Origin: Bispira polyomma
Taxonomy: Eukaryota
Length of the DNA stretch: 64,000 nucleotides
Reading direction: 5' to 3'
NCBI GenBank assembly: GCA_965649765.1
Contig: OZ287754.1
Span: 24,986,001 to 25,050,000 of the forward strand
Positions 12,301 through 64,000 of this stretch are shown here, piece by piece (the stretch's first letter is position 1; each line of letters begins with the position of its first letter). The translations under genes were made by a program, and so were the position numbers. The notes under the pieces were generated by a model, which searched no databases, was not told where the DNA came from, and saw only the letters and a list, made by a program, of their open reading frames with translations.

Positions 12301-12306
12301 TATTAG
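11450..12306 (+). pseudogene. tyrosine recombinase of the DIRS/Ngaro-like element (broken, truncated)
   Basis: ORF 11731-12306 carries the catalytic-type R (FRMSN) and HxxR (HPCRRSGAT) motifs but ends before the catalytic Tyr region. Confidence 0.8.
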
Positions 12307-21964: not shown

Positions 21965-22056
21965 TTAGTTGTTCATCCACATGGCTGCAATGGTCAGCAT
22001 CATCAGCATAAGGGAAGGTTCCTTTAGTGTGGCACTGCTTTTAACTTCAAAAAGTT
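21965..22056 (-). CDS. last coding exon: GPI-anchor-type C-terminal signal (K)LFEVKSSATLKEPSLMLMMLTIAAMWMNN*
   Basis: Acceptor gtgttttttaag and phase 1 matching the repeat exons. Small-residue triplet SSA, a polar spacer, a 13-residue hydrophobic stretch, then TAA. An alternative in-frame AG lies 12 nt downstream. Confidence 0.8.
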
Positions 22057-23932
22057 CTTAAAAAACACATGAATCACATTAATTATAATATCATTCTCAG
22101 TATCTTGTTGTTTTACTTCCTTGGTGGTTCTTACTTTATACATACCGTCTGTTTACTTCAGTGTTTACTCAGCATGTTTTACAATAGACAATATTGACTT
22201 TTGAGATAGTATTCAAATTTGTTGATAAAGCACAAATAGTTTTGGTAAGAAGTGAATGTGTAATCGGGACTTGGTTCCAGCAGAAGACATTTGAAACACT
22301 TTCTTGTTTAGGACAGAAACTTAAAACCTATTGCTGCAAACTGGACTAGACCCCTTAGTTCCCTCCTAGTGCACCTTACATCCTTCCTTGCGGCCTTGGC
22401 TATGCTTTTGGACTAATTTTTAACATGATTCAACATGTGTATTTTTATGAAATTGTCAAGGCAATGATACTTGTGAGACATGATATGTCTCTAATTTGCA
22501 AAGTGCATTATGACACAAAAGTTTAATTGTGACTTCGACTTTGAGAACACTCTATTATTGTTATAATTTGTTTTAGTTGTACTCACTTTGACAGCCAGAT
22601 TTGTCTGCCTTCAGGACTTTGTCATTAGTACATTTCATGCAATTGTCATGTGAATCACATTCTACACAGTCTGCCATTGCCTCGGAGCAAGCTGAAAAAA
22701 GCAACAACGGTACAAATTTACATTACTACAAGTTATCTCCTGAATAAACATGCACGCAATAATCCTGAAAAAGTAAAGACAAAGTTCTATGCCACCTTAA
22801 CCAAGAGATTTTTTTCATGTGGGGACTACAATTTGGGTCTCCTTCATCTTTTTTGTTGACTTTTGGTGTGAAGAAGTTAATTGACATTTTAGAAATCATT
22901 GAAGTTATGTCCTCTCAAGAATGATTGACTAAAGGACAGTCGCAAAATATAGGACTTTCCGGCTGAATTCACACAATTCCTAGAGACCCTTAGTCTACTT
23001 CCAATGGTAAAACCTCCTGAACGTTTTCGGTTACATTTAGCACATTAAAACAGCTACCCACATCCCCAACCATATTCTAGATCTAGTTATAAGTCAATCT
23101 GAGTCAACTCTGCTAAAAGCCACAGATGTCCCTGATGGTATCTCTGATCATTTCGCCACTTTTGCCACTATTTTGCTACCCAAAGATATCAAGGGTAAAA
23201 CCAAAATCATTAAAATTTAAGGATTAAATAAAATTGACATCAATAATTTCGACATGATATATTGGCCTCCAACCTCATCAAATGCCCATGTAAACAAGCT
23301 AAATTTTAGGCAACCAATACCAAAATACTTGACACACACACCAGTCACCAACAAGCATTTCACCGTCTCCTCCTAATAAATGGTCGACTGCAGCCATCTC
23401 TTAGACCAAACACTGTAAGCAACAGATTGAGAAAGTTTGGCATCAGACAAAATCTGGGTACTACAAACGGCAATACAGAAGGGCCACAAATGATTTTAAT
23501 GCCCATATGTCCAAGGCCTACAAGGACCACGATGAATATATCACCTCTGACAATTTTAACTCCCCTAAAAAGCTATGGAACTCAGTAAACTCCATCCTCC
23601 AGAGAAAATCAGGAAACTCACTACCAGATAGACACTGTACATTTCGTTTCAGAGAGTTTTTTTTATCAAACTTTTAAAATCAGATCTGCCTTTAGGGCTG
23701 CAACTGACAACCTCCCTACGATGTTCTTGGGCTCAATCACTTTCATTCTATGTCTGAGAGTGATGTCTTTAAACTTATTACATCCTCCACTCTCAAATCC
23801 TGTGACTTTGATGCCATTCCAGGTTCTGTTATTTCCAATGTCTTGACATTCTTAATTCACCCATCACTAACATAGTTAACTTATCACTTCTTAAAGGCAG
23901 TTTTCCTGCCTGTTTGACAACTACTTTTTTAC

Positions 23933-23963
<31 letters not shown>

Positions 23964-26900
23964 ACATATACTCAAGAAATCCAACCTTGATAAACACACT
24001 TAAAAATTTTAGGCTTGTGTCTGGCAGCAGGCAGCACGCCTAAATCAGTATGCCTACAGAAAAAATCACTCAGCTGAAAGTGCGTTCTTATATATACTGA
24101 CATCAAACTTGTCTTGACAAAGGTAAAACTACTGCTTTGACACTTGCCAGATGTCTCGACTCCATCCAAGATTGGATCAATTTTTCCAAACTCACACTTA
24201 ATCCTGTCAAAACTAAATTTTATACTAAACAGCACTAAAAAACACAAGGAATAAACTTAAGTCAATGTTTCCTATTAATCTACTCAGCAATGACATACTC
24301 CCAGCGGATAAAGTAAAAAATTTGGGTGTTACTTTTGACTCCCTCTTTTCCTTCGACAATCATATGTCTAATATACGTCGATCTAGTTACATTGATCATG
24401 CATTTGTAAGCAGTCGATCGGACTACTGCAATTTTTGGCTTCTTAGACTAATGAAGTACCAGATGCAAAGGCTACAATCAATGCAGAATCACATGCGCAG
24501 AGGCGTGTGCTGTGTGGGATGATGTGTCAGTATGACTCCTTTTCTCAAAAGGCTACATTGGCTACCTGTACAGTACCGCATCAGTTTCAAGACCAATGTT
24601 ACAACATACAAAGCTGTAAACGTATGTCAGCCCCCATATCTTGCCTTGCCTCCCTCTTACCAAGGGAAAATAATTTCAGTCTCTAATACCAGGACTAGTA
24701 AACGGATTGGATCCTATGCTTTCTCTGTTGCAGCACTTACCCTATGGAATAATTTACCAACCAATATATGATCACAGAAAACCCTCATTGGCTTTAGAAG
24801 TAACCTTAAGACTCATATCTTCACTGTCGCTTACTTTCTATATACATGTCCTCAACGTCTTCCGAATCCTATAGAAGATGCCTGGCATCATTTAGGCGCA
24901 TTAAGAATCTATCATATCATATCATATATTGCGATATTACAGTTGTATTAACTTTTAGATATTGCAATATATTGGGCCATATTCCATTTGCAATATAATT
25001 GTATTGAAAAAATATATTGTGATATATAGAGTTTCCAATGTATTGTTTCACCTAATTGTCTAATCTGAACAGCACCATCAAGGTCCTATTGCAATTGGTC
25101 TTATTGTTGCACCTTAACATATAGTTAAACCCTATTAAGTGTAGTTTTAGATATTTCTGAAATAATTTTCACATACCGTCAATTTACACCAGCAATGTCA
25201 CTGCGGGTACCCGAGGGTATGGGTACCTGTACCTAGTTGCTCGATAATGGTTTCAAACATAGGTTGTCGGTGTTTCTTTGTTACCCACTAGGCCAGAGTG
25301 ACAGATAAAACAAACGATCAAAGAAACTACGACTGATTATGTAAAGCTTATCAAAAACATTAATCTGCTGTCTTGGCTAAAGCATGACTTAACTTAAATT
25401 TATTTTGTGTGTACTCACCTTGACAACCAGTCCTGTCTTTCTTGGGGACTTTGTCATTACTACAAGCCGTACAACTGTCATGTGAGTCACAAACTGCACA
25501 ATCTTCCATTGCATCAGAGCAAGCTGAATATAGTATTATATTTAGAATTTTGTGTTACATAGTACAAATTCGCATTACTACAAGTTATCTCGTTAATAAC
25601 TTAAGCACAAATATGTTGGGTGATAAGTGAATGTGTAATATTGTACTAATTTCCAGAAAATAGGGTTCTGGTGGCTGTAGCATGGTCTGGTATGGGTACC
25701 TATACTTGGTAGATCAAGACTGAATTCAAACCTGGGTGGTCTGTGTTTCTAAGCGAATGTGTTACCCACTAGGCCAGAGTGACAGATAAAACAAAGAAAC
25801 TACGCCTAATTAAGTAAAGCTTATCAAAAACATTAATATGTTGTCTTGGCTACAGCATGACTGAACTTAAATTCGTTTTGTGTGTACTCACCTTGACAAC
25901 CAGTGTTGTCTTCCTTGGGGACCTTTTCATTACTACAAGCCGTACAACTGTCATGTGAGTCACATGCTGCACAATCTTCCATAGTCTCCGAGCAAGCTGA
26001 ATATAGCATAATATTTAGCATTTGGTGTTACATAGTACAAATGTGTATTGTGTGTTATCTCCTTAATAACTTAAGCACAAATAGGTTGGGTGATAAGTGA
26101 ATGTGTAATAGTGTGCTTATTTCCAGAAAAAAGAATTTTTGTACCATAGCATGGGCTGGTATGGGTACCTTTACCTATTAGATCAAGACTGGATTCAAAC
26201 CTGGGTCCAGTGTTCCATAGTGAATGTGGTATCAACTAAGATACAGTGACTGATGAAACAAACAAGAATGCTTTTCAGTATCAAATTTTGTATTCTTATT
26301 GAAAGCTTTTAGCTTTTAGCAATTTGTGTTTAGTATAACATATTTACATTACCACAATTTAGAGTTGATCAACTCTTGAATAAATTTAGCACAAACTGTC
26401 TAGATACTCTAGTGTTACTCAGCATGTTTTTCAATTGACATTATTGTCTACTAATGATTTTTAAAGGAATATTTAAATTTGTTGATGAAACACAAATAGT
26501 TTAGGCAAAAATTAAATGTGTATTTACATTTTCAGAAAATAGGATTAAGGTAGCAGTGTCACGACAGGTATGGGTACCTTACCTAGTTACTCAATACTGA
26601 TTTCAAGCATAGATGTGTTCCTAAGTGCATGTGTTACCCACTAGGCCAGAGTGACAGATAAAACAAATGATAAAGAAACTACGACTAATTATGTAAAGCT
26701 TATCTAAAATATTAATATGTTGTCTTGGTTACAGCATGACTGAACTTAAATTTTATTTTGTGTGTACTAACCTTGACAACCAGTGTTGTCTTCCTTGGGG
26801 ACTTTGTCATTACTACAAGCCGTACAACTGTCAAGTGAGTCACATGCTGCACAATCTTCCATGGTCACTGAGCAAGCTGAATATAGCATAATATTTAGCA

Positions 26901-29900
26901 TTTGGTGTTACATAGTACAGATGTGTATTACTACAAGTTATCGCCTTAATAACTTAAACGCATATAGGTTAGGTGATAATTGAATGTGTAATAGTGTACT
27001 AATTTTCAGAAAATAGGATGTGTGTGGCCGTGGCATGGGCTGGTATGGGTACCATAACCTGGTAGATCAAGACTGGATTCAAACCTAGGCTGTCTGTGTT
27101 CCCAAGCGAGTGTGTTACCCACTCTGCATGAGTGACAGAAAAAACAAACGATCAAAGAAACTATGACTATTTATGTGAAGCTTATCAAAACATTAATCTG
27201 TGGTCTTGGCTACAGCATGACTTACCATAACTTTTATTTTGTGTGTACTAACCTTGACAACCAGTCTTGTCTTCCTTAGGGACTTTGTCATTACTACAAG
27301 CCGTACAACTGTCAAGTGAGTCACATGCTGCACAATCTTCCATGGTCAATGAGCAAGCTAAATATAGCATTTGGTGTTTTATAGTACAAATTTGCATTAC
27401 TACAAGTTATCTCCTTAATATGCTTAGCACAAACAAGTTGGGAGATAAGCGGAGGTGTAATAGGGTAATCTGTTCCAGAAAGTAGGATTCAAGTGGCTGT
27501 GTCATGGGCGAGTACCCAAGGGTATGGGTACCTTTACCGAGTCGAACAAGACTCACTCAAAGATCGGTTGAGCGAATGTGTTACACCGACTAGACCAGAG
27601 TGACAGATAAAACAAACGATCAAAGAAACTATAACTAATTATTTAAAGCTTATCAAAAACAGTAATATGTTGTCTTGGCTACAGCATGACTGAACTTAAA
27701 TTCGTTTTGTGTGTACTCACCTTGACAACCAGTGTTGTCTTCCTTGAGGACTCTGTCATTACTACAAGCCGTACAATTGTCAAATGAGTCACATGCTGCA
27801 CAATCTTCCATTGCCTCAGAGCAAGCTGAATATAGCAATATATTTAGCATTTTGTGTTTAGTAGTACATATTTACATTACTACAAGTTATCTCCTTAATA
27901 GAAGTTCAGTACAAATAATTTTGGTTATAAGTGAAGGTGTAATAGGGTTCTATGTTCCAGAAAATCGGATTCAGGTGGCTGTGTAATGGGCGGGTACCCT
28001 GCGATATGGATACTTTTACCTGGTAAATCAAGCCTGGATTCAAACCTAGGTCCACTGTGTTCATAAACAAATGTGGTATCCACTGGGACACAGAAATGAT
28101 AATGCTTTTCAAGATCAAATTTTGTATTTCTTATTGAAAGCAATCATCAATTGAAAATATGTACTAAAAGTAACACAAAAATTTAAACATATATGTTATT
28201 ACTAAATAAAGATTCATGGAAAGATACACAAAATGTTAAATATATACACTAAATCACTACAAACTTCAAATTCATAGTTATAAAAACACTATTTAAAATT
28301 GCTGAATGGAATGCAAATTTTCTTCCTTTCTTTGAAGTTGTTGGTAAATTATATAAAAGTATTATGTATCTGTAACTAGTGAATACTCAAGACTTAATGT
28401 TATCAGTAAAGTAGAAGATTGAATTTAAATTTTTAAAGTTGATCGACTCTTGAATAAACTTAGCACATACTGTCTAGATACTCCAGTGTTACTCAGCATG
28501 TTTGACAATGGACATTATTGTTTACCAATGATTTTTGAAGGGATATTCAAATTTGTTGACTAAACACAAATAGTTTAGGCAATAAGTGATGCGTGTTCAC
28601 ATATTCAGAAAATAGGATTCGAGTAGCAGTGTCACAACAGGTATAGGTACCTTACCTTGTTGATCGATACTGGTTTCAAACAAAGGTTTTCTGTGTTCCT
28701 AAGCGGATGTGTTACCCACTAGGCCAGAGTAACAGATAAAACAAACGATCAAAAAAACTATAACTAATTATATGAAGCTGATCTGTTGCAGAAAAAAGGA
28801 TTCGGGCAGCTGTGTCCAGGGCTGGTACTCGGAAGTATGGGTATGATTACCTGGTCAATCAAAACTAGATTCAAACCTAGGTTCTTTCTGTTACTAAGTA
28901 AATGTGTTACCCACAAAGCCAAAGTGACAGATAAAGGAAACAATCAAAGAAACTATAACTAATTATGTAAAGCTTATCAAAAACATTAATCTGTTGTCTT
29001 GGTTAAGGCATGACTTAACTTAAATTTATTTTGTGTATACTCACTTTGACAGCCAGTGTTGTCTTGCTTGATGACTTTGTCATTACTACAAGCCGTACAA
29101 CTGTCATGTGAGTCACATGCTGCACAATCTTCCATTGCCTCAGAGCAAGCTGAATATAACATTATATTTAGCATTTTGTGCTTAGTAGTACAGATTTACA
29201 TTAGTGTAAGTTATCTCCTTAATAAGTTTAGAACAAAAATAAATTGTGTGGTAAGTGAGGGTGTAATAGGTACTCAGTTCCAGAAAATATGATTTGGGTG
29301 CCTGTGTCATGGGTGGGTACCAGTAACTACAGGTGCCTTTACCTGGTCTATTGAGACTGGATTCAAACTTAGGTCCACTGTGTTCCCAAACGAATGTGGT
29401 ATACACTGGGACACAGTGGCTGATAAAAAAAACGATAATGCTTGTTAATATGAAGTTTTGTATTCCTTATTGAAAGCTAACATCAATTGAAAATATGTAC
29501 CAAAAGTTACACAAAAAATGAAACATAAATATTATTATTACTAAAAAAGATTCACTGTAAGATACACAAAATGTTAAATATATACACTAAATTACTGCAA
29601 ACTTTAAATTTATAGTTAAAAAAATATTATTTAAAATTCATGAATGTGTAAATGGATTTATTTTACTTTCTTTGAAATTGTTGGTAAATTATATATAAGT
29701 ATCAGTGACTATTAAATACTCAAGATTTGTTTTACTTTCTTTGAAATTGTTGGTAAATTATATATAAGTATCAGTAACTATTAAATACTCAAAAGACCTA
29801 TTGTTATTAGTAATGAAGAAGATTGATTTAAAGTATTTAGAGTTGATCAACTCTTGAATAAATTTAGCACATACTGTCTAGTTACTCTAGTCTTTACTCA

Positions 29901-32900
29901 GCATGTTTTACAATGGACAATATTGTCTACTTATGATTTTTGAAGGAATACTCACTTTGGCAACCAGTGTTGTCTTCCTTGAGGACTTTGTCATTACTAC
30001 AATCCGTACAACTGTCATGTGAGTCACATGCTGCACAATCTTCCATTGCCTCAGAGCAAGCTGAATATAGCATTATATTTAGCATTTTGTGCTTAGTAGT
30101 ACAGATTTACAGTAGTATAAGCTGTCTCCTTATTAAGTTCAGAACAAATAATTGGGGTGGTAAGTGAAAGTGTAGTAGGTACTTCATTCCAGAAAATAGG
30201 ATTTGGGTGCCTTTGTCATGGGTGGGTATCCGGAACTACAGGTGCCTTTACCTGGTCTATTGAGACTAGATTCAAATCTATGTTCTCTCTGTTCCTAAGC
30301 AAAGGTGTTACCCACTAGGCCAAGGTGACAGATAAAACAAACAATCAAAGAAACTATAACTAATTATGTAAAACTTATCAAAAACATAAATTTGTTGTCT
30401 TGGTTACGTCATGAATGGACTTAAATTTATTTTGTGTGTACTCACCTTGACAACCAGTCTTGTCTTCCTTGGGGACTTTGTCGTTACTACAATCAGTACA
30501 ACTGTCATGTGAGTCACATACTGCACAATCTTCCATGGTGTCAGAGCAAGCTGAATATAAAAATGTATTTAGCATATTGTGTTTGGTTGTACAGATTTAC
30601 ATTACTACAATTTATCTCCTTAATATAAGTTCAGCACCAATAATTTCGGTTGTAAGTGAATGTGTAATAGATACTCAGTTTCAGAAAATAAGAATCGAAC
30701 GGCTTTGTTACGGGCGGGTATCCGGAAGTATGAGTACCTTTACCTGGTCGATCAAGACTGGATTCAAACCTAGGTCAGTGTTCCATAGTGAATGTGGTAT
30801 CAACTATGACACAGTGACTGATAAAACAAACGAGGATGCTTTTAAATATCAAATTATGTAGAATTATTGAAAGCTTTTTATTGAAGGCATTTTATGTTTA
30901 GTGGTTCAGATTTACATTACTACAATTTATATCCTCAATAAAAGTTCAGCACAAATAATTCGGGTGGTAAGTGAAGGTGTAATAAGGTAATTTCAAGAAA
31001 ATACAATTCAGGTGGCTGGCATGAGTACCTCTACCTGGTCTATAATGAATGTTTTACCCACTTGGCCTGAGTGACAAATCAAACAAACAACCAAAGAAAC
31101 TCTGGCTACTGCAACCAGTCAACTTATCAAAACATACAGATGTTGTCTTGGGTACAGCATGAATTACTTTAACTCCTATTTTGTGTATCCTCACCTTGGC
31201 AACCAGTGTTGTCTTCCTTGAGGACTTTGTCATTACTACAAGCCGTGCAACTGTCATGTGAGTCACATGCTGCACAATCTTCCATTGTCTCAGAGCAAGC
31301 TGAATATAGCATTATATATATATATATAACTTCAAAACAAAACATTTGGGTAGTAAGTGAAGGTGTAATAAGTACTCAGTTCCTGAAAATAGGATTTGGG
31401 TGCCTGTGTTATGGGTGGGGGCCTGGAACTACAGATGCCTTTACCTGGTAAATTGAAACTGGATTCAAATCTAGGTTTACTGTGTTCCTAAGCGAATGTG
31501 GTATCCACTGGGACACAGTGACCAATAAAAGAAATGATAATGCTTTTCAAGATCAAGTTTTGTATTTCTTATTGAAAGCAATCATCAATTGAAAATATGT
31601 ACTAAAAGTAACACAAAAATTTAAACATATATGTTATTACTAAATAAAGATTCATGGAAAGATACACAAAATGTTAAATATATACACTAAATCACTACAA
31701 ACTTCAAATTCATAGTTATAAAAACACTATTTAAAATTGCTGAATGGAATGCAAATTTTCTTCCTTTCTTTGAAGTTGTTGGTAAATTATATAAAAGTAT
31801 TATGTATCTGTAACTAGTGAATACTCAAGACTTAATGTTATCAGTAATGTAGAAGATTGAATTTAAATTTTTAAAGTTGATCGACTCTTGAATAAACTTA
31901 GCACATACTGTCTAGATACTCCAGTGTTACTCAGCATGTTTGACAATGGACATTATTGTTTACCAATGATTTTTGAAGGGATATTCAAATTTGTTGACTA
32001 AACACAAATAGTTTAGGCAATAAGTGATGCGTGTTCACATATTCAGAAAATAGGATTCGAGTAGCAGTTTCACAACAGGTATAGATACCTTACCTTGTTG
32101 ATCGATACTGGTTTCAAACAAAGGTTTTCTGTGTTCCTAAGCGGATGTGTTACCCACTAGGCCAGAGTAACAGATAAAACAAACGATCAAAAAAACTGTA
32201 ACTAATTATGTAAAACTTATCAAAAACATTAATCTGTTGTCTTGGTTAAGGCATGACTTAACTTAAATTTATTTTGTGTATACTCACTTTGACAGCCAGT
32301 GTTGTCTTGCTTGATGACTTTGTCATTACTACAAGCCGTACAACTGTCATGTGAGTCACATACTGCACAATCTTCCATGGTGTCAGAGCAAGCTGAATAT
32401 AAAAATGTATTTAGCATATTGTGTTTGGTTGTACAGATTTACATTACTACAATTTATCTCCTTAATATAAGTTCAGCACCAATAATTTCGGTTGTAAGTG
32501 AATGTGTAATAGATACTCAGTTTCAGAAAATAAGAATCGAACGGCTTTGTTACGGGCGGGTATCCGGAAGTATGAGTACCTTTACCTGGTCGATCAAGAC
32601 TGGATTCAAACCTAGGTCAGTGTTCCATAGTGAATGTGGTATCAACTATGACACAGTGACTGATAAAACAAACGAGGATGCTTTTAAATATCAAATTATG
32701 TAGAATTATTGAAAGCTTTTTATTGAAGGCATTTTATGTTTAGTGGTTGAGATTTACATTACTACAATTTATATCCTCAATAAAAGTTCAGCACAAATAA
32801 TTCGGGTGGTAAGTGAAGGTGTAATAAGGTAATTTCAAGAAAATACAATTCAGGTGGCTGGCATGAGTACCTCTACCTGGTCTATAATGAATGTTTTACC

Positions 32901-35900
32901 CACTTGGCCTGAGTGACAAATCAAACAAACAACCAAACAAACTCTGGCTACTGCAACCAGTCAACTTATCAAAACATACAGATGTTGTCTTGGGTACAGC
33001 ATGAATTACTTTAACTCCTATTTTGTGTATCCTCACCTTGGCAACCAGTGTTGTCTTCCTTGAGGACTTTGTCATTACTACAAGCCGTGCAACTGTCATG
33101 TGAGTCACATGCTGCACAATCTTCCATTGTCTCAGAGCAAGCTGAATATAGCATTATATATATATATATATAAGTTCAAAACAAAACATTTGGGTAGTAA
33201 GTGAAGGTGTAATAAGTACTCAGTTCCTGAAAATAGGATTTGGGTGCCTGTGTTATGGGTGGGGGCCTGGAACTACAGATGCCTTTACCTGGTAAATTGA
33301 AACTGGATTCAAATCTAGGTTTACTGTGTTCCTAAGCGAATGTGGTATCCACTGGGACACAGTGACCAATAAAAGAAATGATAATGCTTTTCAAGATCAA
33401 GTTTTGTATTTCTTATTGAAAGCAATCATCAATTGAAAATATGTACTAAAAGTAACACAAAAATTTAAACATATATGTTATTACTAAATAAAGATTCATG
33501 GAAAGATACACAAAATGTTAAATATATACACTAAATCACTACAAACTTCAAATTCATAGTTATAAAAACACTATTTAAAATTGCTGAATGGAATGCAAAT
33601 TTTCTTCCTTTCTTTGAAGTTGTTGGTAAATTATATAAAAGTATTATGTATCTGTAACTAGTGAATACTCAAGACTTAATGTTATCAGTAATGTAGAAGA
33701 TTGAATTTAAATTTTTAAAGTTGATCGACTCTTGAATAAACTTAGCACATACTGTCTAGATACTCCAGTGTTACTCAGCATGTTTGACAATGGACATTAT
33801 TGTTTACCAATGATTTTTGAAGGGATATTCAAATTTGTTGACTAAACACAAATAGTTTAGGCAATAAGTGATGCGTGTTCACATATTCAGAAAATAGGAT
33901 TCGAGTAGCAGTTTCACAACAGGTATAGATACCTTACCTTGTTGATCGATACTGGTTTCAAACAAAGGTTTTCTGTGTTCCTAAGCGGATGTGTTACCCA
34001 CTAGGCCAGAGTAACAGATAAAACAAACGATCAAAAAAACTGTAACTAATTATGTAAAACTTATCAAAAACATTAATCTGTTGTCTTGGTTAAGGCATGA
34101 CTTAACTTAAATTTATTTTGTGTATACTCACTTTGACAGCCAGTGTTGTCTTGCTTGATGACTTTGTCATTACTACAAGCCGTACAACTGTCATGTGAGT
34201 CACATACTGCACAATCTTCCATGGTGTCAGAGCAAGCTGAATATAAAAATGTATTTAGCATATTGTGTTTGGTTGTACAGATTTACATTACTACAATTTA
34301 TCTCCTTAATATAAGTTCAGCACCAATAATTTCGGTTGTAAGTGAATGTGTAATAGATACTCAGTTTCAGAAAATAAGAATCGAACGGCTTTGTTACGGG
34401 CGGGTATCCGGAAGTATGAGTACCTTTACCTGGTCGATCAAGACTGGATTCAAACCTAGGTCAGTGTTCCATAGTGAATGTGGTATCAACTATGACACAG
34501 TGACTGATAAAACAAACGAGGATGCTTTTAAATATCAAATTATGTAGAATTATTGAAAGCTTTTTATTGAAGGCATTTTATGTTTAGTGGTTGAGATTTA
34601 CATTACTACAATTTATATCCTCAATAAAAGTTCAGCACAAATAATTCGGGTGGTAAGTGAAGGTGTAATAAGGTAATTTCAAGAAAATACAATTCAGGTG
34701 GCTGGCATGAGTACCTCTACCTGGTCTATAATGAATGTTTTACCCACTTGGCCTGAGTGACAAATCAAACAAACAACCAAAGAAACTCTGGCTACTGCAA
34801 CCAGTCAACTTATCAAAACATACAGATGTTGTCTTGGGTACAGCATGAATTACTTTAACTCCTATTTTGTGTATCCTCACCTTGGCAACCAGTGTTGTCT
34901 TCCTTGAGGACTTTGTCATTACTACAAGCCGTGCAACTGTCATGTGAGTCACATGCTGCACAATCTTCCATTGTCTCAGAGCAAGCTGAATATAGCATTA
35001 TATATATATATATATAAGTTCAAAACAAAACATTTGGGTAGTAAGTGAAGGTGTAATAAGTACTCAGTTCCTGAAAATAGGATTTGGGTGCCTGTGTTAT
35101 GGGTGGGGGCCTGGAACTACAGATGCCTTTACCTGGTAAATTGAAACTGGATTCAAATCTAGGTTTACTGTGTTCCTAAGCGAATGTGGTATCCACTGGG
35201 ACACAGTGACCAATAAAAGAAATGATAATGCTTTTCAAGATCAAGTTTTGTATTTCTTATTGAAAGCAATCATCAATTGAAAATATGTACTAAAAGTAAC
35301 ACAAAAATTTAAACATATATGTTATTACTAAATAAAGATTCATGGAAAGATACACAAAATGTTAAATATATACACTAAATCACTACAAACTTCAAATTCA
35401 TAGTTATAAAAACACTATTTAAAATTGCTGAATGGAATGCAAATTTTCTTCCTTTCTTTGAAGTTGTTGGTAAATTATATAAAAGTATTATGTATCTGTA
35501 ACTAGTGAATACTCAAGACTTAATGTTATCAGTAATGTAGAAGATTGAATTTAAATTTTTAAAGTTGATCGACTCTTGAATAAACTTAGCACATACTGTC
35601 TAGATACTCCAGTGTTACTCAGCATGTTTGACAATGGACATTATTGTTTACCAATGATTTTTGAAGGGATATTCAAATTTGTTGACTAAACACAAATAGT
35701 TTAGGCAATAAGTGATGCGTGTTCACATATTCAGAAAATAGGATTCGAGTAGCAGTTTCACAACAGGTATAGATACCTTACCTTGTTGATCGATACTGGT
35801 TTCAAACAAAGATTTTCTGTGTTCCTAAGCGGATGTGTTACCCACTAGGCCAGAGTAACAGATAAAACAAACGATCAAAAAAACTGTAACTAATTATGTA

Positions 35901-50900: not shown

Positions 50901-53900
50901 AGCACCAATAATTTCGGTTGTAAGTGAATGTGTAATAGATACTCAGTTTCAGAAAATAAGAATCGAACGGCTTTGTTACGGGCGGGTATCCGGAAGTATG
51001 AGTACCTTTACCTGGTCGATCAAGACTGGATTCAAACCTAGGTCAGTGTTCCATAGTGAATGTGGTATCAACTATGACACAGTGACTGATAAAACAAACG
51101 AGGATGCTTTTAAATATCAAATTATGTAGAATTATTGAAAGCTTTTTATTGAAGGCATTTTATGTTTAGTGGTTCAGATTTACATTACTACAATTTATAT
51201 CCTCAATAAAAGTTCAGCACAAATAATTCGGGTGGTAAGTGAAGGTGTAATAAGGTAATTTCAAGAAAATACAATTCAGGTGGCTGGCATGAGTACCTCT
51301 ACCTGGTCTATAATGAATGTTTTACCCACTTGGCCTGAGTGACAAATCAAACAAACAACCAAAGAAACTCTGGCTACTGCAACCAGTCAACTTATCAAAA
51401 CATACAGATGTTGTCTTGGGTACAGCATGAATTACTTTAACTCCTATTTTGTGTATCCTCACCTTGGCAACCAGTGTTGTCTTCCTTGAGGACTTTGTCA
51501 TTACTACAAGCCGTGCAACTGTCATGTGAGTCACATGCTCAACAATCTTCCATTGTCTCAGAGCAAGCTGAATATAGCATTATATATATATATATAAGTT
51601 CAAAACAAAACATTTGGGTAGTAAGTGAAGGTGTAATAAGTACTCAGTTCCTGAAAATAGGATTTGGGTGCCTGTGTTATGGGTGGGGGCCTGGAACTAC
51701 AGATGCCTTTACCTGGTAAATTGAAACTGGATTCAAATCTAGGTTTACTGTGTTCCTAAGCGAATGTGGTATCCACTGGGACACAGTGACCAATAAAAGA
51801 AATGATAATGCTTTTCAAGATCAAGTTTTGTATTTCTTATTGAAAGCAATCATCAATTGAAAATATGTACTAAAAGTAACACAAAAATTTAAACATATAT
51901 GTTATTACTAAATAAAGATTCATGGAAAGATACACAAAATGTTAAATATATACACTAAATCACTACAAACTTCAAATTCATAGTTATAAAAACACTATTT
52001 AAAATTGCTGAATGGAATGCAAATTTTCTTCCTTTCTTTGAAGTTGTTGGTAAATTATATAAAAGTATTATGTATCTGTAACTAGTGAATACTCAAGACT
52101 TAATGTTATCAGTAATGTAGAAGATTGAATTTAAATTTTTAAAGTTGATCGACTCTTGAATAAACTTAGCACATACTGTCTAGATACTCCAGTGTTACTC
52201 AGCATGTTTGACAATGGACATTATTGTTTACCAATGATTTTTGAAGGGATATTCAAATTTGTTGACTAAACACAAATAGTTTAGGCAATAAGTGATGCGT
52301 GTTCACATATTCAGAAAATAGGATTCGAGTAGCAGTTTCACAACAGGTATAGATACCTTACCTTGTTGATCGATACTGGTTTCAAACAAAGGTTTTCTGT
52401 GTTCCTAAGCGGATGTGTTACCCACTAGGCCAGAGTAACAGATAAAACAAACGATCAAAAAAACTGTAACTAATTATGTAAAACTTATCAAAAACATTAA
52501 TCTGTTGTCTTGGTTAAGGCATGACTTAACTTAAATTTATTTTGTGTATACTCACTTTGACAGCCAGTGTTGTCTTGCTTGATGACTTTGTCATTACTAC
52601 AAGCCGTACAACTGTCATGTGAGTCACATACTGCACAATCTTCCATGGTGTCAGAGCAAGCTGAATATAAAAATGTATTTAGCATATTGTGTTTGGTTGT
52701 ACAGATTTACATTACTACAATTTATCTCCTTAATATAAGTTCAGCACCAATAATTTCGGTTGTAAGTGAATGTGTAATAGACAGTTTCAGAAAATAAGAT
52801 TCGAACGGCTTTGTTACGGGCGGGTATCCGGAAGTATGAGTACCTTTACCTGGTCGATCAAGACTGGATTCAAACCTAGGTCAGTGTTCCATAGTGAATG
52901 TGGTATCATATTACATTACTACAATTTATATCCTCAATAGAAGTTCAGCACAAATAATTCGGGTGGTAAGTGAAGGTGTAATAAGGTAGTAATTTCAAGA
53001 AAATACAATTCAGGTGGCTGGCATGAGTACCTCTACCTGGTCTATAAAGACTGGATTCAAACCTAGGTTCTATGTGTAATCTCCAATGAATGTTTTATCC
53101 ACTAGGCCTGAGTGACAAATCAAACAAACAACCAAAGAAACTCTGGCTACTGCAACCAATCAACTTATCAAAACATACAGATGTTGTCTTGGGTACAGCA
53201 TGAATTACTTTAACTTCTATTTTGTGTATACTCACTTTGGCAACCAGTGTTGTCTTACTTGAGGACTTTGTCATTACTACAAGCCGTACAACTGTCATGT
53301 GAGTCACATGCTGCACAATCTTCCATTGTCTCAGAGCAAGCGAGCATTATATTTAGCATTTTGTGTTATATAGTACAGATTTGTATTACTACAAGTTATC
53401 TCCTTGATAACTTAAGCACAAATAGGTTCTGTGATAAGTGAATGTGTAATAGTGTACTTCCTTACTGTGGGCCACTGGTTTCAGTGCAGAACCTTGACCG
53501 ACTGTATGCAGTGTTCCTCCAGCATTTCCAACTACCCGTCCCAATATAACCTACTAAAAGGTACTAGAGTGGATGTTAAATATCCAAATTCAAAGTAATA
53601 GTGTACTAATTTCCAGAAAATAGAATTTGGGTGGCTGTGGCATTGGCTGGTATGAGTACCTTTACCTGGTCGATCAAGACTGGATTCAAACTTAAGTTGA
53701 CCGTATTTCTAAGCAAATGTGTTACCCACTAGGTAAGAGTGACAGATAAAACAAATGGTCAAAGAAACTATAATTAATTATGTAAAGCTTATCAAAATAT
53801 TAATCTCTTATCTTGCCTACCGCGTGACTTACCTTAACTATTATTTTGTGTGTACTCACCTTGACAACCAGTCTTGTCTTCTTTAGGAGCTTTGTCATTA

Positions 53901-56900
53901 CTACAAGCCGTACAACTGTTGTGTGAGTCACATGCTGCACAATCTTCCATTGCCTCCGAGCAAGCTGAAATGACAATATATTTAGCATTTTGTGTACTAT
54001 AGTACAGATTTACATTAGTACAGGTTATCTCCTTAAATTTAGGTTCAGCGCAAATAATTTGGGTAGTAAGTGAATGAGTAATAGGGTTCTCTGTCCAGAA
54101 AATAGGATTTAAGTGGCTGTGTCATAGGCGGGTACTAGGGAATAATCTAAACTAATCTAGTTGTACTTTTATACCGCTTAATCTTTGTACAACAAATTAT
54201 AAGGTGCAACAAACCCGAAACATTAATCAAAAATTAAAAAGTAGTGGGCGGATGGAAGTCGTAACCAGGAAGACTACCGGAATGGTTGCCACGGCTAAGG
54301 TGGAAAAGCCTGTTCAAAAAGGTAGGCCTTCAGAGGATAAAGTTTGAGTCAGGTAAGCCAGGCGAACAGGATCAGGTAGGCTGTTCCAAATGAGGGGGCC
54401 ATCATGAGCTGGGCAGGGATTGAACTGAACTTTGGATTTGTGGATGTGAGGGTCAAAAGTGGGAATGTTAAGGTATAATTTATCAGGGTTACTGCGCCTT
54501 GTCCTTACTGAGCATGTATATTTGGATAGATGGTGGCTGAAATAAGTGGGTAATCCAGAATTTAGAAATTTATGTATAATTGTTTCTGTTTTGAAAGCAA
54601 CACGATATTTTATTGGGAGCCAGTGCATTGACTTGAGTACAGGAGTAATGTGGAAAAATTTGGAAGTTTTGGTCACAATACGTGCCAGTGAGTGTTGAAT
54701 GTTCTGAAGGCGTTTTTCAGATTTCAGATCAATACGAAAAAAGGAACGAAACAGAGAGTTGCAGTAATCAAGCCTACTGCTGACCAAAGCATTGGCAATG
54801 GTAATTGCAGTGGATTTGGAAAGATAGTGTCGAATCTGCCTGAAATCACGAACACTAACAAAACATAATCTCAACACCGATGCAACATGGTTAGAGAAGG
54901 AGAATTCAGAGTCGAACAACACACCCAGGTTGTGTACTTTGTCACCTGAAAAAAACCTGCTGCCAAGAATATCAAGTGGAAAACAGCCGGACAGGGAATA
55001 TGAATACCTTTGCATGGTCGATCAAGCCTGAATTCAAACCTAGGTCCACTGTGTTCCTAAACGAATGTGGTATCCACTAGGACACAGTGATCGATAAAAC
55101 AAACGAGAATGATTTTTAGAGTCAAATTTTATATCTCTTATTGAAAGCTATCATGAGTTCAAAATATGTACTAAAAGTTACACAGAAAATTAAACATATA
55201 TATTATTACTAAAAAGATTTCCTGAAAGATACACAAAATGTTAAATATATACACTAAACCACTGCAAGCTTCAAATTAATAGTTACAAAAACATTATTCA
55301 AAATTGATGAATGCGTTAATGGAAATTATCTTCCTTTCTTTGAAATTGTTGGTAAATTATATAAAAGTATTATGTATCCGTAACTAGTGAATACTCAAAA
55401 GACTTAATGTTATTAGTAGTAAAGAAGATTGAGTTAAATTATTTAGAGTTGATCAACTCCTAAATAAATTTAGCACATACTGTCTAGATATTCTAGTCTT
55501 TACTCAGTATGTTTTAAAATGGACATTATTGTCTACTAATGATTTTTTAAGGAATATTTAAATTTGTTAATGAAAGACAAATAATTTAGGCAATATGTGA
55601 ATGTGTGTTCAGATATTCAGAAAATAGGATTCGGGTCGCAGTGTTACGATTGGTATGAGTACCTTACCTAGTTGCTCAATACTGGTTCAAACATATGTTG
55701 TCTGTGTTCCTAAGCAAATGTGTTACCCACTAGGCCAGTGTTTTAGATAAAACAAACGATCAAAGAAACTACGACTGATTATGTAAAGCTTATCAAAAAC
55801 ATTAACCTGCTGTCTTGCTTACAACATGACTAAACTTAAATTCATTTTGTGTGTACTCTCTTTGACAGCCAGTGTTGTCTTCCTTGAGGACTTTGTCATT
55901 ACTACAAGCCGTACAACTGTCATACGAGTCACATGTTGCACAATCTTCCATTGCCTCAGAGCAAGCTGAATATAGCATTATATTTAGCATTTTTTGTTAT
56001 ATAGTACAGATTTACATTACTACAAGTTATTCCCTGAATGAATATGCTAGAAGTCATTTCAGTACTTTGGTTATTTCTATTATTTTATGGCTACATTATT
56101 TTTGGGGGCTGTTCATTATTAAAGCATTCTGAAACATCAACAAAGTTTCAGTGAGGATTTTTCACTAGTTTATGTGTGTTTATTTTCATAAATAAGGCCA
56201 TTTGAATGAATAATATATATTTACACATATACATACATATACATAGTGTACATTGATAACGTGCTGTAACCACATCTTTGTATCATTTTTATTTCAAGGT
56301 TTTGTTATTACGAAAGTTGCACTTATGATTTCCCAACAATAGCTATTTGTTGGAGCCATGCAAATCACTGGCCAACAAATATAAATGTTCTATGCTGCTT
56401 TTAGAATAGCAGTGAATTTTATGTATGTGTAGTGGAAAATGCTGACTCCTCCATTAAGAGTCAAGGTGTACAAAGGCAATTGAATGTTTAAAAAGTTTTG
56501 CAGCCATGTCTTCTCCTGATTAATTCAGATTAATTCGGACTCAGATTTTTATTTTGTGGCCATTTAATCACGAAATAGAAAAAGGCACAAGTATCACCTC
56601 CAAAAATGCTAGGATGCATAAAAAGGCGAGGACTCATGTCTAGTGAATGGACCAGAGGAATGTGAGATTAATAAAGACATGACTGCTGATCAAAAGAAGA
56701 AGTTAAATTATTGTCCCAAATATAAGGCGAACAAGAATTAAATGCCTTCTCAAAATCTACAAGCATCAATAATCCGGTAATTTTTCCTGTTTAGTAAAAT
56801 GCATTAGAGAGGTAATAAAATAGTGTTGTGCACTCACCTATGTATCTGCCACAGAGAAAATCAGATTGATTTGTTGAAATTATCAAGTTTATTACCCTTT

Positions 56901-59900: not shown

Positions 59901-62680
59901 ACAAAGCATGCTATGCGGTGATTTTTAGCACGATTGGAAGCGTGGTAACACGAAGCGAAGCCTGAGTGTTTCTGAGCTCCAAGAGTGCTAAAAGTTACCG
60001 TATAGCATGCTTTGGAATGTGTTAACCCTATCCTAACATGACAAATTAAAAATATCAAATGATTCAATTTGTTTTAACTTAAAAATTACGTTATTAAAGG
60101 AACTATATTCATTTGGGCACTGCAGACGATTTTAGACTACTTCGGTTCGTGCAAAAATGGTTATTTTTAACATAGAGTTCAGCCAATCAGATACGCAGAC
60201 ACAGCCGTGGCACGTTAGAATAAGAAATAAATATTCAGCAGTTATAGTCAAATAAAGAGTGTTTATTATCATTTAAAGTTGTTTGTTGTCACCAGAATAT
60301 TCCCCGAAATTACAATACTTCATTGGCAAGTCCTTGACAATTTACTCCATTGGTGATTAAAGAATAGATTGAAATAAAATGGAAAAGATGCTATTATTTG
60401 CAAGGGCTGATAACTTAATTGCCAATGAAGTATTATTTCTTATTAATATACTCATTATCGGTGTTATGTACTCATTATCAGTGTTATCTGTAAAGTTTCA
60501 GTACATTGAATCTACATCAGTTGTCTCTTAATTAGGGCAATGGATTAATTTATTCAGATCATTTGTCTCTGAAGTGACAGTAAAGAACTCTGTCCACACA
60601 AAAAAGATTGTTTCAAAAAAGGAGAGATGTCACCTTTTCTGATCACTTCACATAAAGTTACCACTCTTGAAGAAGACATGGACAATTGAAATTGTCTGTG
60701 CAATGAAGAACTGCAAAACCGGTGAAACCAAAACTCATATTTCATGTCAAAAGAATTTTAACACAATACATGGTTTTCCAATGTTGATAGAGCTGGGGGA
60801 AGATTTATATGGTAGTGGGGGGTATTAATTTCTATGGGGATTTTACTAGGGGTAAGATCTAATTTTACAGTGGAATGGTAGATATTTTGAAAGCCATGAT
60901 AGTAATTTTTGTTAGTTAGAGTATGTGAAGAGCCGAAAATTTCCGTTACTACATGTACCTCATATGTATGCCAAATATGAAAGCACAGATTCCAGTAAAT
61001 TTTAACGAATAGGAAGTGCGTACGTCACTGTGGAGTTGGTCCCTGAAGTTATATTGTTTACAGATAAAACTACAGGAATATTTTGTTTGGCTTACTAGGC
61101 CAAATGAGTGGGTGGTTATCACAAATCAAAGTTTCATTATTATGAAAGAATAATGAAGGTTTTGTGAATGTGAATTATGACAAGTGTAAAACTAGAAAAC
61201 GTTTTTTGATAACAAAAACAAAACGTCCCCAAGTTGAAATAATAATGAAATTGTTTAGTGTACAAGGTTTGATATTGTTTAAAAGTTGACATATAAGCAC
61301 TTTTGGTCGAATATAAGCTGGAAATCGCTCTATGTAGCACCATTTCCGAGATAACAGACATTTCCTAAAAAGACCAGAAATTGAAGATGGTTGCCTAAAT
61401 CGAAAATTACTTCAAAAGTTTACATTTAAGAAAAATCAGCCCTGTGGGTCAAAAAGGAGCTTAAAATCGCTCTATCTAGCACTGTTTCTAAGATAAAAGA
61501 CATTTTCAAAAAAGACGCAGAAATTCAAGATGGCTGCCAAAATCGAAAATTTTTTTAAAAAAGTTTACATATAAGCAAAATCTTCCCACTCCTGGTTAAG
61601 AGAGCTGCCTAAAATAATTTTGATGCAGATAACATTGAAGGAGATATTCAAGGAAGACCATGCGGTGGCGGCCTAGGCGACAGCAGTGAGGAAACCAGGG
61701 GTGAAACCAAGGGACGCTTAATTATCATGTATGGTAAATATTTTGACATTTATGACATATTTATGTTAAAGGTATATTATATTTTAGCCCTAATTGATGG
61801 GCTATTTATGCTTGCTTTAATGCTTTTTTTGATCATACTATTATCATTTAACTTAAATGAAACTTTGCTTTACATGTGTTAATATTATGGTGATGGTATA
61901 TGACAGTCAATTATTTTTATAGAATTAACAATTTATGTACAGATGTTAAAATGCCAATAAATTACTCCAAACATTGTTTTACAATCTGCTTCTTACCTCA
62001 ACCTTTGACCTACATATGAACTAATAGGACTGCAAGGCAAAGTAGCAAGCAGTGCTGGAAACTGTAGCACCAGAATGACTTCAGTAATTACTAAATATTT
62101 ATAATTTAGTAGCAAATATTACAAGCTTGCAAGCTCATGATCATATTTTTAAGGATAAATAATTTAAATATACTTTTAGAAATTAAACCACACTATAACA
62201 CAAATATATTTATCTATCCAGTATGGCCTTGACCTTACTGCTTCTAAACAAACTTTAGTACTTAATCTGTAATCATACCCCCAATGTAATAATCCTTCTT
62301 GAAATATTTAAGAAATGTCATATTTATATTATAACAAACGATTTATAATAAATGTAATTATGTAATACATCTAGAGTCATTGATATATAGATTGAATTCA
62401 TGTGACTCGTTCCTACAGTAAGTTGTTTACAAATCTGGCATTTGTCGCTAGACTTAGTGAACAAAATAAGGAGCTATGTAGTATGTATAAAGTAAGTAAA
62501 TTTGCACCCACTAGAATGTACCTAATGTGTGTTTTTCAGACACAAAACGTCACTCACTTAAGCATGCCTTCTCATCCAGTTTGAACACTCTGTCCCCTTC
62601 GCATTCGGTACAGTTAGTGAGGACATAGTCTTCTTGTTCAAATATTTCACAAGACAGGCAGTTGGAGACATCGGTACAAG
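21965..62680 (-). CDS. multi-exon gene (5'-partial) for a predicted GPI-anchored, CxxC/furin-like cysteine-rich tandem-repeat surface protein
   Basis: One 123-nt and 36 105-nt phase 1-1 exons with pyrimidine-rich YAG acceptors and GT donors (33 of the 36 intact). They splice in frame to a last exon with a stop at 21965-21967. Exon length and all six Cys are invariant while introns are heavily rearranged. Start codon not found in the window. Confidence 0.85.
22587..22691 (-). CDS. divergent 3'-most repeat exon xCSEAMADCVECDSHDNCMKCTNDKVLKADKSGCQ
   Basis: 105 nt, ttttttcag acceptor, GTGAGT donor, 6 Cys. Not in the ORF track. Confidence 0.88.
22810..24930 (+). mobile_element. intronic L2/CR1-type LINE remnant (endonuclease end to 3' tail, internally deleted)
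   Basis: CGDYN, GISDHF, KLWNSVN, KVKNLGVTFDS, FLKRLHWLPVQYRISFK, AFSVAA.TLWN.LP. Ends in an (ATCAT)n tail at ~24910-24927. Confidence 0.85.
25419..25523 (-). CDS. repeat exon xCSDAMEDCAVCDSHDSCTACSNDKVPKKDRTGCQ
   Basis: 105 nt, AG/GT, phase 1-1. Confidence 0.85.
25892..25996 (-). CDS. repeat exon xCSETMEDCAACDSHDSCTACSNEKVPKEDNTGCQ
   Basis: 105 nt, AG/GT, phase 1-1. Confidence 0.85.
26772..26876 (-). CDS. repeat exon xCSVTMEDCAACDSLDSCTACSNDKVPKEDNTGCQ
   Basis: 105 nt, donor GTTAGT. Confidence 0.8.
27253..27357 (-). CDS. repeat exon xCSLTMEDCAACDSLDSCTACSNDKVPKEDKTGCQ
   Basis: 105 nt, acceptor tttag, donor GTTAGT. Confidence 0.8.
27721..27825 (-). CDS. repeat exon xCSEAMEDCAACDSFDNCTACSNDRVLKEDNTGCQ
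   Basis: 105 nt, AG/GT. Contains an N-C-T sequon. Confidence 0.85.
29045..29149 (-). CDS. repeat exon xCSEAMEDCAACDSHDSCTACSNDKVIKQDNTGCQ
   Basis: 105 nt, AG/GT. Confidence 0.85.
29956..30060 (-). CDS. repeat exon xCSEAMEDCAACDSHDSCTDCSNDKVLKEDNTGCQ
   Basis: 105 nt. The donor GTGAGT survives an intronic deletion that starts just after it. Confidence 0.82.
30446..30550 (-). CDS. repeat exon xCSDTMEDCAVCDSHDSCTDCSNDKVPKEDKTGCQ
   Basis: 105 nt, AG/GT. The array boundary falls inside it. Confidence 0.85.
31195..31299 (-). CDS. type B repeat exon (representative of 11 intact copies in the array)
   Basis: 105 nt, acceptor tattcag, donor GTGAGG. Confidence 0.83.
32288..32392 (-). CDS. type A repeat exon (representative of 12 copies in the array)
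   Basis: 105 nt, acceptor ttttatattcag, donor GTGAGT. Confidence 0.85.
51463..51567 (-). pseudogene. type B exon copy with an in-frame TGA
   Basis: GCA>TGA at 51539-51541 (plus strand tca instead of tgc). Splice sites intact. Confidence 0.75.
53236..53340 (-). pseudogene. pseudo-exon: acceptor lost and in-frame TAA
   Basis: Acceptor reads ..gctcg instead of ..attcag (small deletion at ~53342). GAA>TAA at 53255-53257. Confidence 0.88.
53459..53594 (+). mobile_element. 136-bp insertion, probably a 5'-truncated SINE, with a 13-bp target-site duplication
   Basis: gtaatagtgtact at 53446-53458 and 53595-53607. Paralogous introns carry one copy and no insert. A-rich end ..gatgttaaatatccaaattcaaa. 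Confidence 0.75.
53860..53964 (-). CDS. repeat exon xCSEAMEDCAACDSHNSCTACSNDKAPKEDKTGCQ
   Basis: 105 nt, acceptor catttcag, donor GTGAGT. Confidence 0.85.
54145..54992 (-). mobile_element. 5'-truncated L2-type LINE with an 8-bp target-site duplication
   Basis: ORF 54314-55015 has VHNLGVLFDS, ALVSSRLDYCNSLF and LKSMHWLPIKYRVAFK. agggaata occurs at 54137-54144 and 54993-55000, and the intron module resumes on both sides. Confidence 0.92.
55861..55965 (-). CDS. repeat exon xCSEAMEDCATCDSYDSCTACSNDKVLKEDNTGCQ with a non-canonical (GA) donor
   Basis: Open 105-nt frame and intact acceptor, but the donor reads GAGAGT (plus actctc, 55855-55860). Confidence 0.55.
56330..57365 (-). mobile_element. 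Tx1/L1-clade LINE fragment (RT N-terminal part), degenerate
   Basis: KSPGIHGFSAEFFKVFW, KGDNPREYLKNWRPISLLSVIYKIGSSAIANR, LVDFEKAF. Confidence 0.85.
59875..60230. mobile_element. probable non-autonomous interspersed element
   Basis: CpG-containing island in AT-rich intron with cgaagcgaag and agccaatcag motifs typical of invertebrate non-autonomous DNA elements. Family not determined. Confidence 0.3.
60940..61722. mobile_element. probable non-autonomous DNA element with ~140-bp internal tandem repeats
   Basis: aaatcgctctat.tagcac..ttt..gagataa.agacattt...aaatt.aagatgg.tgcc.aaatcgaaaatt occurs twice (~61321 and ~61464). GC-rich end followed by ttaa. Confidence 0.4.
62558..62680 (-). CDS. divergent 5'-most visible exon xCTDVSNCLSCEIFEQEDYVLTNCTECEGDRVFKLDEKACL
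   Basis: 123 nt, acceptor tgtttcag, donor GTGAGT, phase 1-1. Six Cys in the same C..CxxC..CxxC-x12-C frame. Not in the ORF track. Confidence 0.85.
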   Translation of the reverse strand, partial: LVPMSPTACLVKYLNKKTMSSLTVPNAKGTECSNWMRRHA

Positions 62681-63179
62681 CTGAAACATAAAACATAAGC
62701 AAATCATATGCGCCCTTTTCATATATTATCCTCTACATCATGTGGAAAAGTTGTTGGCTACTAGACCAGTGGTTTAATGTCTACCATCATTAGATCTGGC
62801 CATCGTAAAATGTCACTAAGTGAGCAACATAAACCCATACATATCGTCCTCTTAGGCACCAGTACTCGGAATGGGATGGTGAAACAATATATAGTCTGGG
62901 TTATCATCAGTAGGCACATGGCATGTTCACATGGAAAAGTACTAGCAGGAATTGAAGTAGGACGACCAATCTTCTCACCAAGAGTCAAACTGACTACCTT
63001 CTGACTACCAGACCATATCCCAAACAATAGATCTAAACAAATCTGCTACAACAACAGAATTAAGTCCTTAAATGTGTGGGCCTATCATTTAACATAATAA
63101 TAAAGTGACTTTAACTTTTATCAAAAAACAAAATTGACTTAGAGCTGTGTTTTGATAGGACGAATTAGTTCCTAATTTC

Positions 63180-63780: not shown

Positions 63781-64000
63781 GTAGCTGAGAACTGCTGAGA
63801 TTGCGTCCCCTTAGTTGCCATAACTGTGTTTTACATAAATGTTTTCAGGGCAAACCCTTTTTTTTAACGTGTGTCACTTATATGTTATCAGTCAAAAATT
63901 ATATTTCATAATTGTTGCCATTATTAATGTGCTTCGCATCATGAGGGTGCGTGATTTTATCTAAACTGTGTTAATAACCAACCCTGTATTGGGACAGTGT

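What the first reader, a model, noticed from the sequence alone, without database searches (positions are those of the whole stretch)
21965..62680. Hidden giant gene: one-exon-one-module CxxC repeat surface protein with a GPI-type tail
Seen in sequence: 36 exons of exactly 105 nt plus one of 123 nt, all phase 1-1. Each encodes C-x6-CxxC-x5-CxxC-x12-C, and a third CxxC (C-Q-[A/T]-C) is created only by splicing. Joining the 33 intact copies, the 123-nt exon and the tail gives roughly 1,200 aa with about 17% Cys and high Asp/Glu. Established: repeated CxxC arrays on membrane-tethered proteins occur in furin-like (FU) repeats, Giardia variant surface proteins and GPI-anchored ciliate immobilisation antigens. 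Inference: this is a metazoan, length-variable, rod-like surface coat or receptor protein that I cannot assign to a named gene. Recognition (immune or gamete) and metal or Ca binding are hypotheses only.
Basis: partly seen in the sequence, partly recalled or inferred. Interest (0 to 1): 0.92.

Follow-up and report, generated by a model that had tools for sequence, protein, structure and literature searches.

The report
Variable-stalk GPI surface protein gene family
An invertebrate animal carries at least 14 unnamed genes for a probably membrane-tethered surface protein with a fast-changing head held out on a rod of 5 to 40 cysteine-bonded repeats, one repeat per exon, a design best known from the coats of single-celled parasites; expression and binding partner are untested.

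Summary
Observation confirmed: 36 exons of 105 nt and one of 123 nt on the minus strand, all phase 1-1, six invariant cysteines, a third CxxC formed only at junctions, and a GPI-type last exon. Cysteines, frame and splice sites are conserved (pN/pS about 0.4). It is not a convertase tail. Just outside the window lie two exons for a ~135-aa head with no database match. The gene is one of 14 paralogues (12 in tandem). Four near-identical copies have 20, 30, 36 and 40 module exons, expanded from different repeat units; a short paralogue has 5. One head exon differs twice as much as its introns (21% vs 10-13%). The module is furin-like/VSP-like by a proxy fold but meets no family cut-off. Caveats: 24 of the 36 exons are one near-perfect 1,842-bp repeat. 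Exon 51567 has intact splice sites and a stop, so this copy may be truncated. Best reading: a lineage-specific recognition or adhesion receptor, variable head on an extensible spacer. The scan noted similar genes on other chromosomes of this genome (s1-670653, s1-686180, s1-680938).

The parts
21965..22056 (-). Last coding exon: GPI-type signal (omega site of small residues, short spacer, hydrophobic end, stop). An in-frame alternative acceptor lies 12 nt further down.
   Evidence: same frame and stop position in the short paralogue
22587..22691 (-). Membrane-proximal 105-nt module exon (most diverged of the window's modules)
25419..30060 (-). Seven older, distinct 105-nt module exons (starts 30060, 29149, 27825, 27357, 26876, 25996, 25523), shared with the sister gene at C7:24.88 Mb
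30446..52660 (-). Tandem array of 12 units of 1,842-1,844 bp, two module exons per unit, 0-7 differences between units; 25 module exons including the closing one at 30550
51463..51567 (-). Module exon with intact AG/GT and an in-frame TGA at codon 9; truncates this copy unless skipped
53236..53340 (-). Dead module exon (acceptor lost, TAA)
53860..53964 (-). Intact 105-nt module exon
55861..55965 (-). Module exon without donor (GA)
62558..62680 (-). 123-nt first Cys module (6 Cys, one N-glycosylation sequon), present in all 14 paralogues
62681..64000 (-). Intron running out of the window. The head exons lie beyond the window's end, in L001 (C7:25050001-25060000), minus strand: 273-nt exon at 2219-1947 (90 aa, fast-diverging), 132-nt exon at 3148-3017 (43 aa, conserved), candidate 34-nt exon at 4107-4074; no signal-peptide exon found

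Best explanation
A lineage-specific family of GPI-anchored surface proteins built like a lollipop. A ~135-aa head (132-nt and 273-nt exons) binds a partner outside the cell; disulfide-bonded 35-aa furin-like modules form an acidic spacer; a GPI anchor holds it in the membrane. Shown: exon structure, constraint on Cys and splice sites, 14 paralogues, stalks of about 5 to 40 module exons, faster divergence of one head exon. Inferred: each module is a symmetric phase 1-1 exon and one CxxC spans each junction, so unequal crossing-over between exon-plus-intron units, or exon skipping, adds or removes whole modules without breaking the frame or the Cys pattern; this sets how far the head reaches. 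Head divergence changes what is bound (microbe, gamete or neighbouring cell). The window's copy is a recently expanded long member that makes a ~1,370-aa protein only if exon 51567 is skipped (about even odds).
For: Six Cys invariant across 30 distinct module DNA versions with TGT/TGC swaps at five of six; pN/pS 0.38-0.46; exons 91% alike against 69-74% for flanking introns. The five modules of the short paralogue are much more diverged yet keep length, phase, Cys and AG/GT. Head exons found in all 14 paralogues, open in 13. 273-nt exon 20.7% diverged against 10.3% and 12.8% for nearby introns (Fisher p 3e-5, 0.003); pN 0.234, pS 0.149. Sister copies 98-99.8% identical in the flanks have 20, 30, 36, 40 module exons from a 2-module or an 8-module unit. 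An unspliced bacterial protein (P0002) has the same 35-aa period with C-Q-A-C at the junction; its model (pLDDT 86) is closest to R-spondin Fu1-Fu2 and VSP clusters. Comparable pattern of selected distal units on a homogenised array in abalone VERL (PMC2704960).
Against: No signal-peptide exon found, and a GPI protein needs one. pN>pS in the head exon is not significant by itself (p 0.12), rests on one pair of gene types, and gene conversion in the introns could mimic the contrast. No fold or homologue for the head. No ligand or tissue data. Some near-identical copies or repeat units could be assembly artefacts.
Confidence: 0.5

Rival explanations
1. Structural or protective coat: the acidic disulfide rod is the working part (protease-resistant glycocalyx, cuticle or egg-coat component, or Ca/metal buffer), and the head only assembles it.
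For: 17% Cys and 22% Asp+Glu; gene number and module number both amplified; Giardia VSPs are thought to form a protective coat and are reported to bind Fe and Zn (10.1101/2022.03.07.483299).
Against: Does not explain why one head exon diverges faster than its introns while the other is conserved; short paralogues keep only about 5 modules; the proxy fold is a disulfide-type furin-like fold.
Confidence: 0.2
2. The family is real but the window's long copy is a null or truncated allele: the 1,842-bp array is a neutral recent expansion, and the TGA exon ends translation after the head, the 123-nt exon and two modules (decay of the mRNA, or a small secreted form).
For: Exon 51567 keeps splice signals identical to an intact sister exon; three of the first five modules are broken; array units are near-identical, too young to show selection. 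In the sister gene at 24.88-24.91 Mb both stop-carrying modules also lack the acceptor.
Against: Head exons, 123-nt exon and tail are intact; symmetric exons can be skipped in frame; two adjacent changes in one unit could be an assembly error. This rival concerns this copy, not the family, and can hold together with the best explanation.
Confidence: 0.4
3. Much of the copy number is assembly artefact: haplotypes placed in tandem and an over-expanded repeat.
For: Four copies 99-100% identical over the tail and head regions; a ~400-kb block of four genes occurs twice on C7; 22 kb of near-perfect repeat.
Against: Copies differ in stalk organisation, not only in bases; variants in the array cluster in neighbouring units, as local crossing-over would give; head exons range from 54 to 98% identity to the window's.
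Confidence: 0.2
4. Cys-rich tail of a known gene (PCSK5/furin convertase, receptor kinase, FRAS1-like).
For: Module resembles furin-like repeats by proxy fold.
Against: The exons upstream are a short head with no Pfam or PDB match; the same head-module-tail unit fits into about 10 kb in short paralogues; tail is GPI-type, not transmembrane with a cytosolic part.
Confidence: 0.02

Closest known systems
Entamoeba histolytica Igl (intermediate lectin subunit)
   Same: GPI-anchored, about 1,100 aa, Cys mostly in CxxC motifs, adhesion role (PMC11537071)
   Different: Protist; its carbohydrate-binding region lies within the CxxC part; no one-exon-one-module structure known to me; no homology shown here
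Giardia variant-specific surface proteins (Pfam PF03302) and VSP-like genes of the myxozoan Sphaerospora molnari (PMC11792419)
   Same: Arrays of CxxC, multigene family, surface-tethered; nearest Atlas clusters for one module (score 0.89, a lead only) and for the proxy fold
   Different: VSPs end in a transmembrane helix with a short conserved cytosolic tail; here a GPI-type end, a separate variable head and intron-delimited modules; no Pfam VSP match for single exons
Furin-like (FU) repeats of R-spondin, PCSK5, receptor tyrosine kinases
   Same: Closest solved fold for the proxy model (R-spondin 1, Foldseek E 6.5e-3, VIA-align Z 4.0)
   Different: 6 Cys per 35 aa instead of 8 per about 45-50 aa (the latter from memory); no catalytic, TSP1 or receptor-L domain; no Pfam FU match
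Abalone egg-coat protein VERL
   Same: Evolutionary pattern: fast-evolving distal part on a long array homogenised by unequal crossing-over (PMC2704960)
   Different: Repeats of about 153 aa without introns between them; unrelated sequence; an analogy only
Ciliate immobilisation antigens (Tetrahymena SerH, Ichthyophthirius i-antigens)
   Same: GPI-anchored, periodic Cys/CxxC repeats, gene family (from memory; no paper found)
   Different: No separate head; periods and Cys counts differ; not compared here

Membership tests
Furin-like (FU) repeat, PF15913/PF14843 | Match above the Pfam cut-off | tested here: not met
   No FU hit for single exons; only single 34-40 aa exons could be searched, which weakens the test
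Furin-like (FU) repeat, PF15913/PF14843 | Eight-Cys repeat | tested here: not met
   Six Cys per 35-aa module
Furin-like (FU) repeat, PF15913/PF14843 | Fu-type disulfide hairpin fold | tested here: inconclusive
   Proxy model of P0002:186-260 (44-50% identical to window modules) hits R-spondin Fu1-Fu2 first, E 6.5e-3, Z 4.0; weak scores, proxy only
Giardia VSP | Repeated CxxC motifs | tested here: met
   Three CxxC per module after splicing
Giardia VSP | C-terminal transmembrane helix with conserved short cytosolic tail | tested here: not met
   Last exon ends in a 13-residue hydrophobic stretch and stop
Giardia VSP | One gene expressed at a time, with switching | not testable with these tools
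   No RNA data
Proprotein convertase (furin/PCSK5) | S8 catalytic and P domains upstream of the Cys-rich region | tested here: not met
   Upstream exons encode a short head without Pfam/PDB match, the same in all 14 paralogues
GPI-anchored protein | C-terminal omega site, spacer, hydrophobic tail | tested here: met
   By inspection and hydropathy, no predictor run; conserved in the short paralogue; one sister copy has lost the stop and gains 9 polar residues
GPI-anchored protein | N-terminal signal peptide | tested here: inconclusive
   No conserved signal exon found; the best candidate frame has TGA in 7 of 13 paralogues
Beta-trefoil (ricin B-type) lectin head | Pfam/PDB match or three-fold internal repeat and trefoil fold | tested here: inconclusive
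   No Pfam/PDB hit; hhalign between the two head exons finds nothing; single-exon model pLDDT 33. Only the size and two Cys pairs 11-14 residues apart, one followed by W-x-F, are suggestive

The most novel reading that the evidence does not exclude
An animal counterpart of protist variant surface antigens: a tandem family of GPI-anchored receptors whose specificity (diversified head exon) and reach (5-40 exon-coded modules, changed by crossing-over and perhaps by exon skipping) vary independently between copies, alleles or cells, serving self/non-self, symbiont or gamete recognition.
Probability: 0.2. Interest if true: 0.8.

Novelty: new variant of a known kind. Interest (0 to 1): 0.55.

Why it matters
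Few diversified recognition receptors are known in worms and molluscs. A 14-gene family with an unmatched head, one accelerated exon and an eight-fold range of spacer length gives a concrete, testable candidate, and a natural series for asking how spacer length affects binding. It also shows exon-level repeat expansion caught in progress: sister genes lengthened their stalks from different units. Automatic gene callers would miss or fragment such genes.

Tried and rejected
Head exons: no hit in Pfam, PDB, Atlas, the 5.8-billion protein set or metagenome contigs; the protein-set search sees only 0.55-1.75 times the query length, so full-length kin could not appear. A weak LRR match of the head exon (repebody, E 0.009) was rejected: it vanishes with the paralogue profile. 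One search was swamped by the unrelated N-terminal domain of P0002. Pfam VSP over the genome rang nowhere, controls included. Literature searches for an animal family of this build found nothing. The species was not identified.
Full report
Observation. The window is C7:24,986,001-25,050,000 of a 1.035-Gb genome in 75 contigs, about 34% GC, with spliceosomal introns: an animal. A six-frame scan finds CxxC-x5-CxxC 35 times on the minus strand and never on the plus strand. Sliding one exon along the window gives 36 copies of exactly 105 nt, plus a 123-nt version at 62680-62558. All are phase 1-1. Thirty-three have AG/GT and an open frame. The strict Cys pattern occurs 34 times against 0 in each of 100 dinucleotide-matched resamples. 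The 34 intact Cys exons add up to 1,196 aa, 17.1% Cys, 21.6% acidic. The last exon (22056-21965) has a small-residue omega site, a short spacer, a hydrophobic end and a stop.

Is it coding? Among 30 distinct intact module sequences from three gene copies, all six Cys are invariant, five of the six codons switch between TGT and TGC, pN/pS is 0.38-0.46 (pairwise, not independent), and exons are 91% alike where flanking introns are 69-74%. The five modules of the neighbouring short gene are far more diverged yet keep length, phase, Cys and splice sites. A bacterial protein without introns (P0002, on a contig beside recG) has the same 35-residue period and the same C-Q-A-C link, so the spliced reading is a natural protein unit.

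Upstream of the window. Comparison with paralogues shows two more phase 1-1 exons, 273 nt (L001:2219-1947) and 132 nt (L001:3148-3017), and a candidate 34-nt exon (L001:4107-4074). They encode a head of about 135-145 aa with no match in Pfam, PDB, the Atlas, the protein collection or metagenome contigs; these searches were exon by exon and limited by length, so they do not prove novelty. No protease or kinase-type domain is present, which removes the convertase reading. By count alone the model is about 1,370 aa. A signal-peptide exon was not found: the best candidate frame is closed by TGA in 7 of 13 paralogues. A TATA-like block about 800 nt upstream of the 34-nt exon is conserved in the C7 copies. 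The joined model was neither searched nor folded.

A family. The 123-nt exon and both head exons each find the same 14 places: 12 in tandem on C7 24.29-25.05 Mb, one at C7 26.10 Mb on the other strand, one at C11 31.02 Mb. Four long copies are 98-99.8% identical outside the stalk but have 40, 20, 30 and 36 module exons. The window's copy grew by 12 repeats of a 1,842-bp two-module unit with 0-7 differences; the sister at 24.88-24.91 Mb grew by an eight-module 6.4-kb unit; both keep the same membrane-proximal modules. The short neighbour has five modules; the other short copies show about five by coordinates, a lower bound. Between the long and short types the 273-nt head exon differs at 20.7% of bases, nearby introns at 10.3% and 12.8% (Fisher p 3e-5, 0.003), and the 132-nt exon at 3%; pN 0.234 against pS 0.149 (p 0.12). 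This is the pattern expected of a binding surface under diversifying selection, but it rests on one pair and gene conversion is not excluded. More distant CxxC modules lie at C11 8.05-8.11 Mb and C12 48.21 Mb. Earlier notes of the scan describe genes of the same build on other chromosomes (s1-670653, s1-686180, s1-680938); s1-670653 reads its head as trefoil-like, which I could not confirm for this head.

Fold of the module. A single exon matches no Pfam family; the Atlas gives VSP and Furin-like_2 clusters at 0.85-0.89, leads only. The two-module stretch of P0002 folds with pLDDT 86 and is nearest to R-spondin Fu1-Fu2 (Foldseek E 6.5e-3; VIA-align Z 4.0) and to VSP and furin-like Atlas clusters (TM 0.61-0.64). 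So the stalk works like a furin-like disulfide rod but fails membership by Cys count and by Pfam score.

A weakness of this copy. Exon 51567 has intact splice sites and differs from an intact sister at 3 of 705 bases, two of which make TGA. If it is spliced in like its sisters, translation ends after the head, the 123-nt exon and two modules. The long product needs it skipped, or the two changes to be an assembly error. In the sister gene both stop-carrying modules also lack their acceptor, and its tail has lost the stop codon.

Mechanism. Most likely (0.5) a recognition or adhesion receptor: variable head, extensible spacer, GPI anchor; symmetric exons let whole modules be gained, lost or skipped in frame. 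Rivals: protective or metal-binding coat (0.2); this copy a truncated allele (0.4, compatible with the family being functional); copy number partly artefact (0.2); convertase tail (0.02). Closest known: Entamoeba Igl (PMC11537071), Giardia VSPs (10.1101/2022.03.07.483299) and myxozoan VSP-like genes (PMC11792419) for build; abalone VERL (PMC2704960) for the evolutionary pattern. I found no paper on an animal family of this build.

Verdict. Real feature, very probably a real gene family; a new variant of a known kind (CxxC/furin-like GPI surface proteins) with an unmatched head.

Noticed in passing
window 19057-21401 against 28096-29832, 31534-31860 (and each array unit), 55124-55438: Pieces of DNA from downstream of the last exon and from the last intron recur inside the long introns (70-76% identity): the stalk grew partly by duplicating the gene's own 3' end without the GPI exon.
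   Followed up: partly
G000:C7:24876286 (L020), sister gene: The tail exon has lost its stop codon and gains nine polar residues, which may weaken the GPI signal.
   Followed up: no
G000:C7:24.335-24.564 Mb and 24.746-24.958 Mb: A block of four family genes occurs twice about 400 kb apart with near-identical sequence: higher-order duplication or a haplotype placed in tandem.
   Followed up: no
L021:3421-4533 (P0002): A Patescibacteria-like surface protein carries two 35-aa CxxC modules 44-50% identical to the animal modules; convergence or transfer not tested.
   Followed up: partly
G000:C11:29228058-29228162: A lone copy of the 132-nt head exon without the 273-nt exon nearby.
   Followed up: no
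G000:C7:25515668-25516245 (+): A further module-plus-flank fragment without a detected head or 123-nt exon.
   Followed up: no
window 19844-20815 (-), 10325-12306 (+), 13257-13574 (-): Decayed transposon pieces: a LINE-type reverse transcriptase fragment (weak RVT_1) and ORFs that look like a tyrosine-recombinase retroelement and a Harbinger-type transposase (by eye; no Pfam hit).
   Followed up: partly
G000:C7:24293538 and 24301652: The first gene of the cluster has stops in both head exons and a long insertion between them: a probable pseudogene.
   Followed up: no
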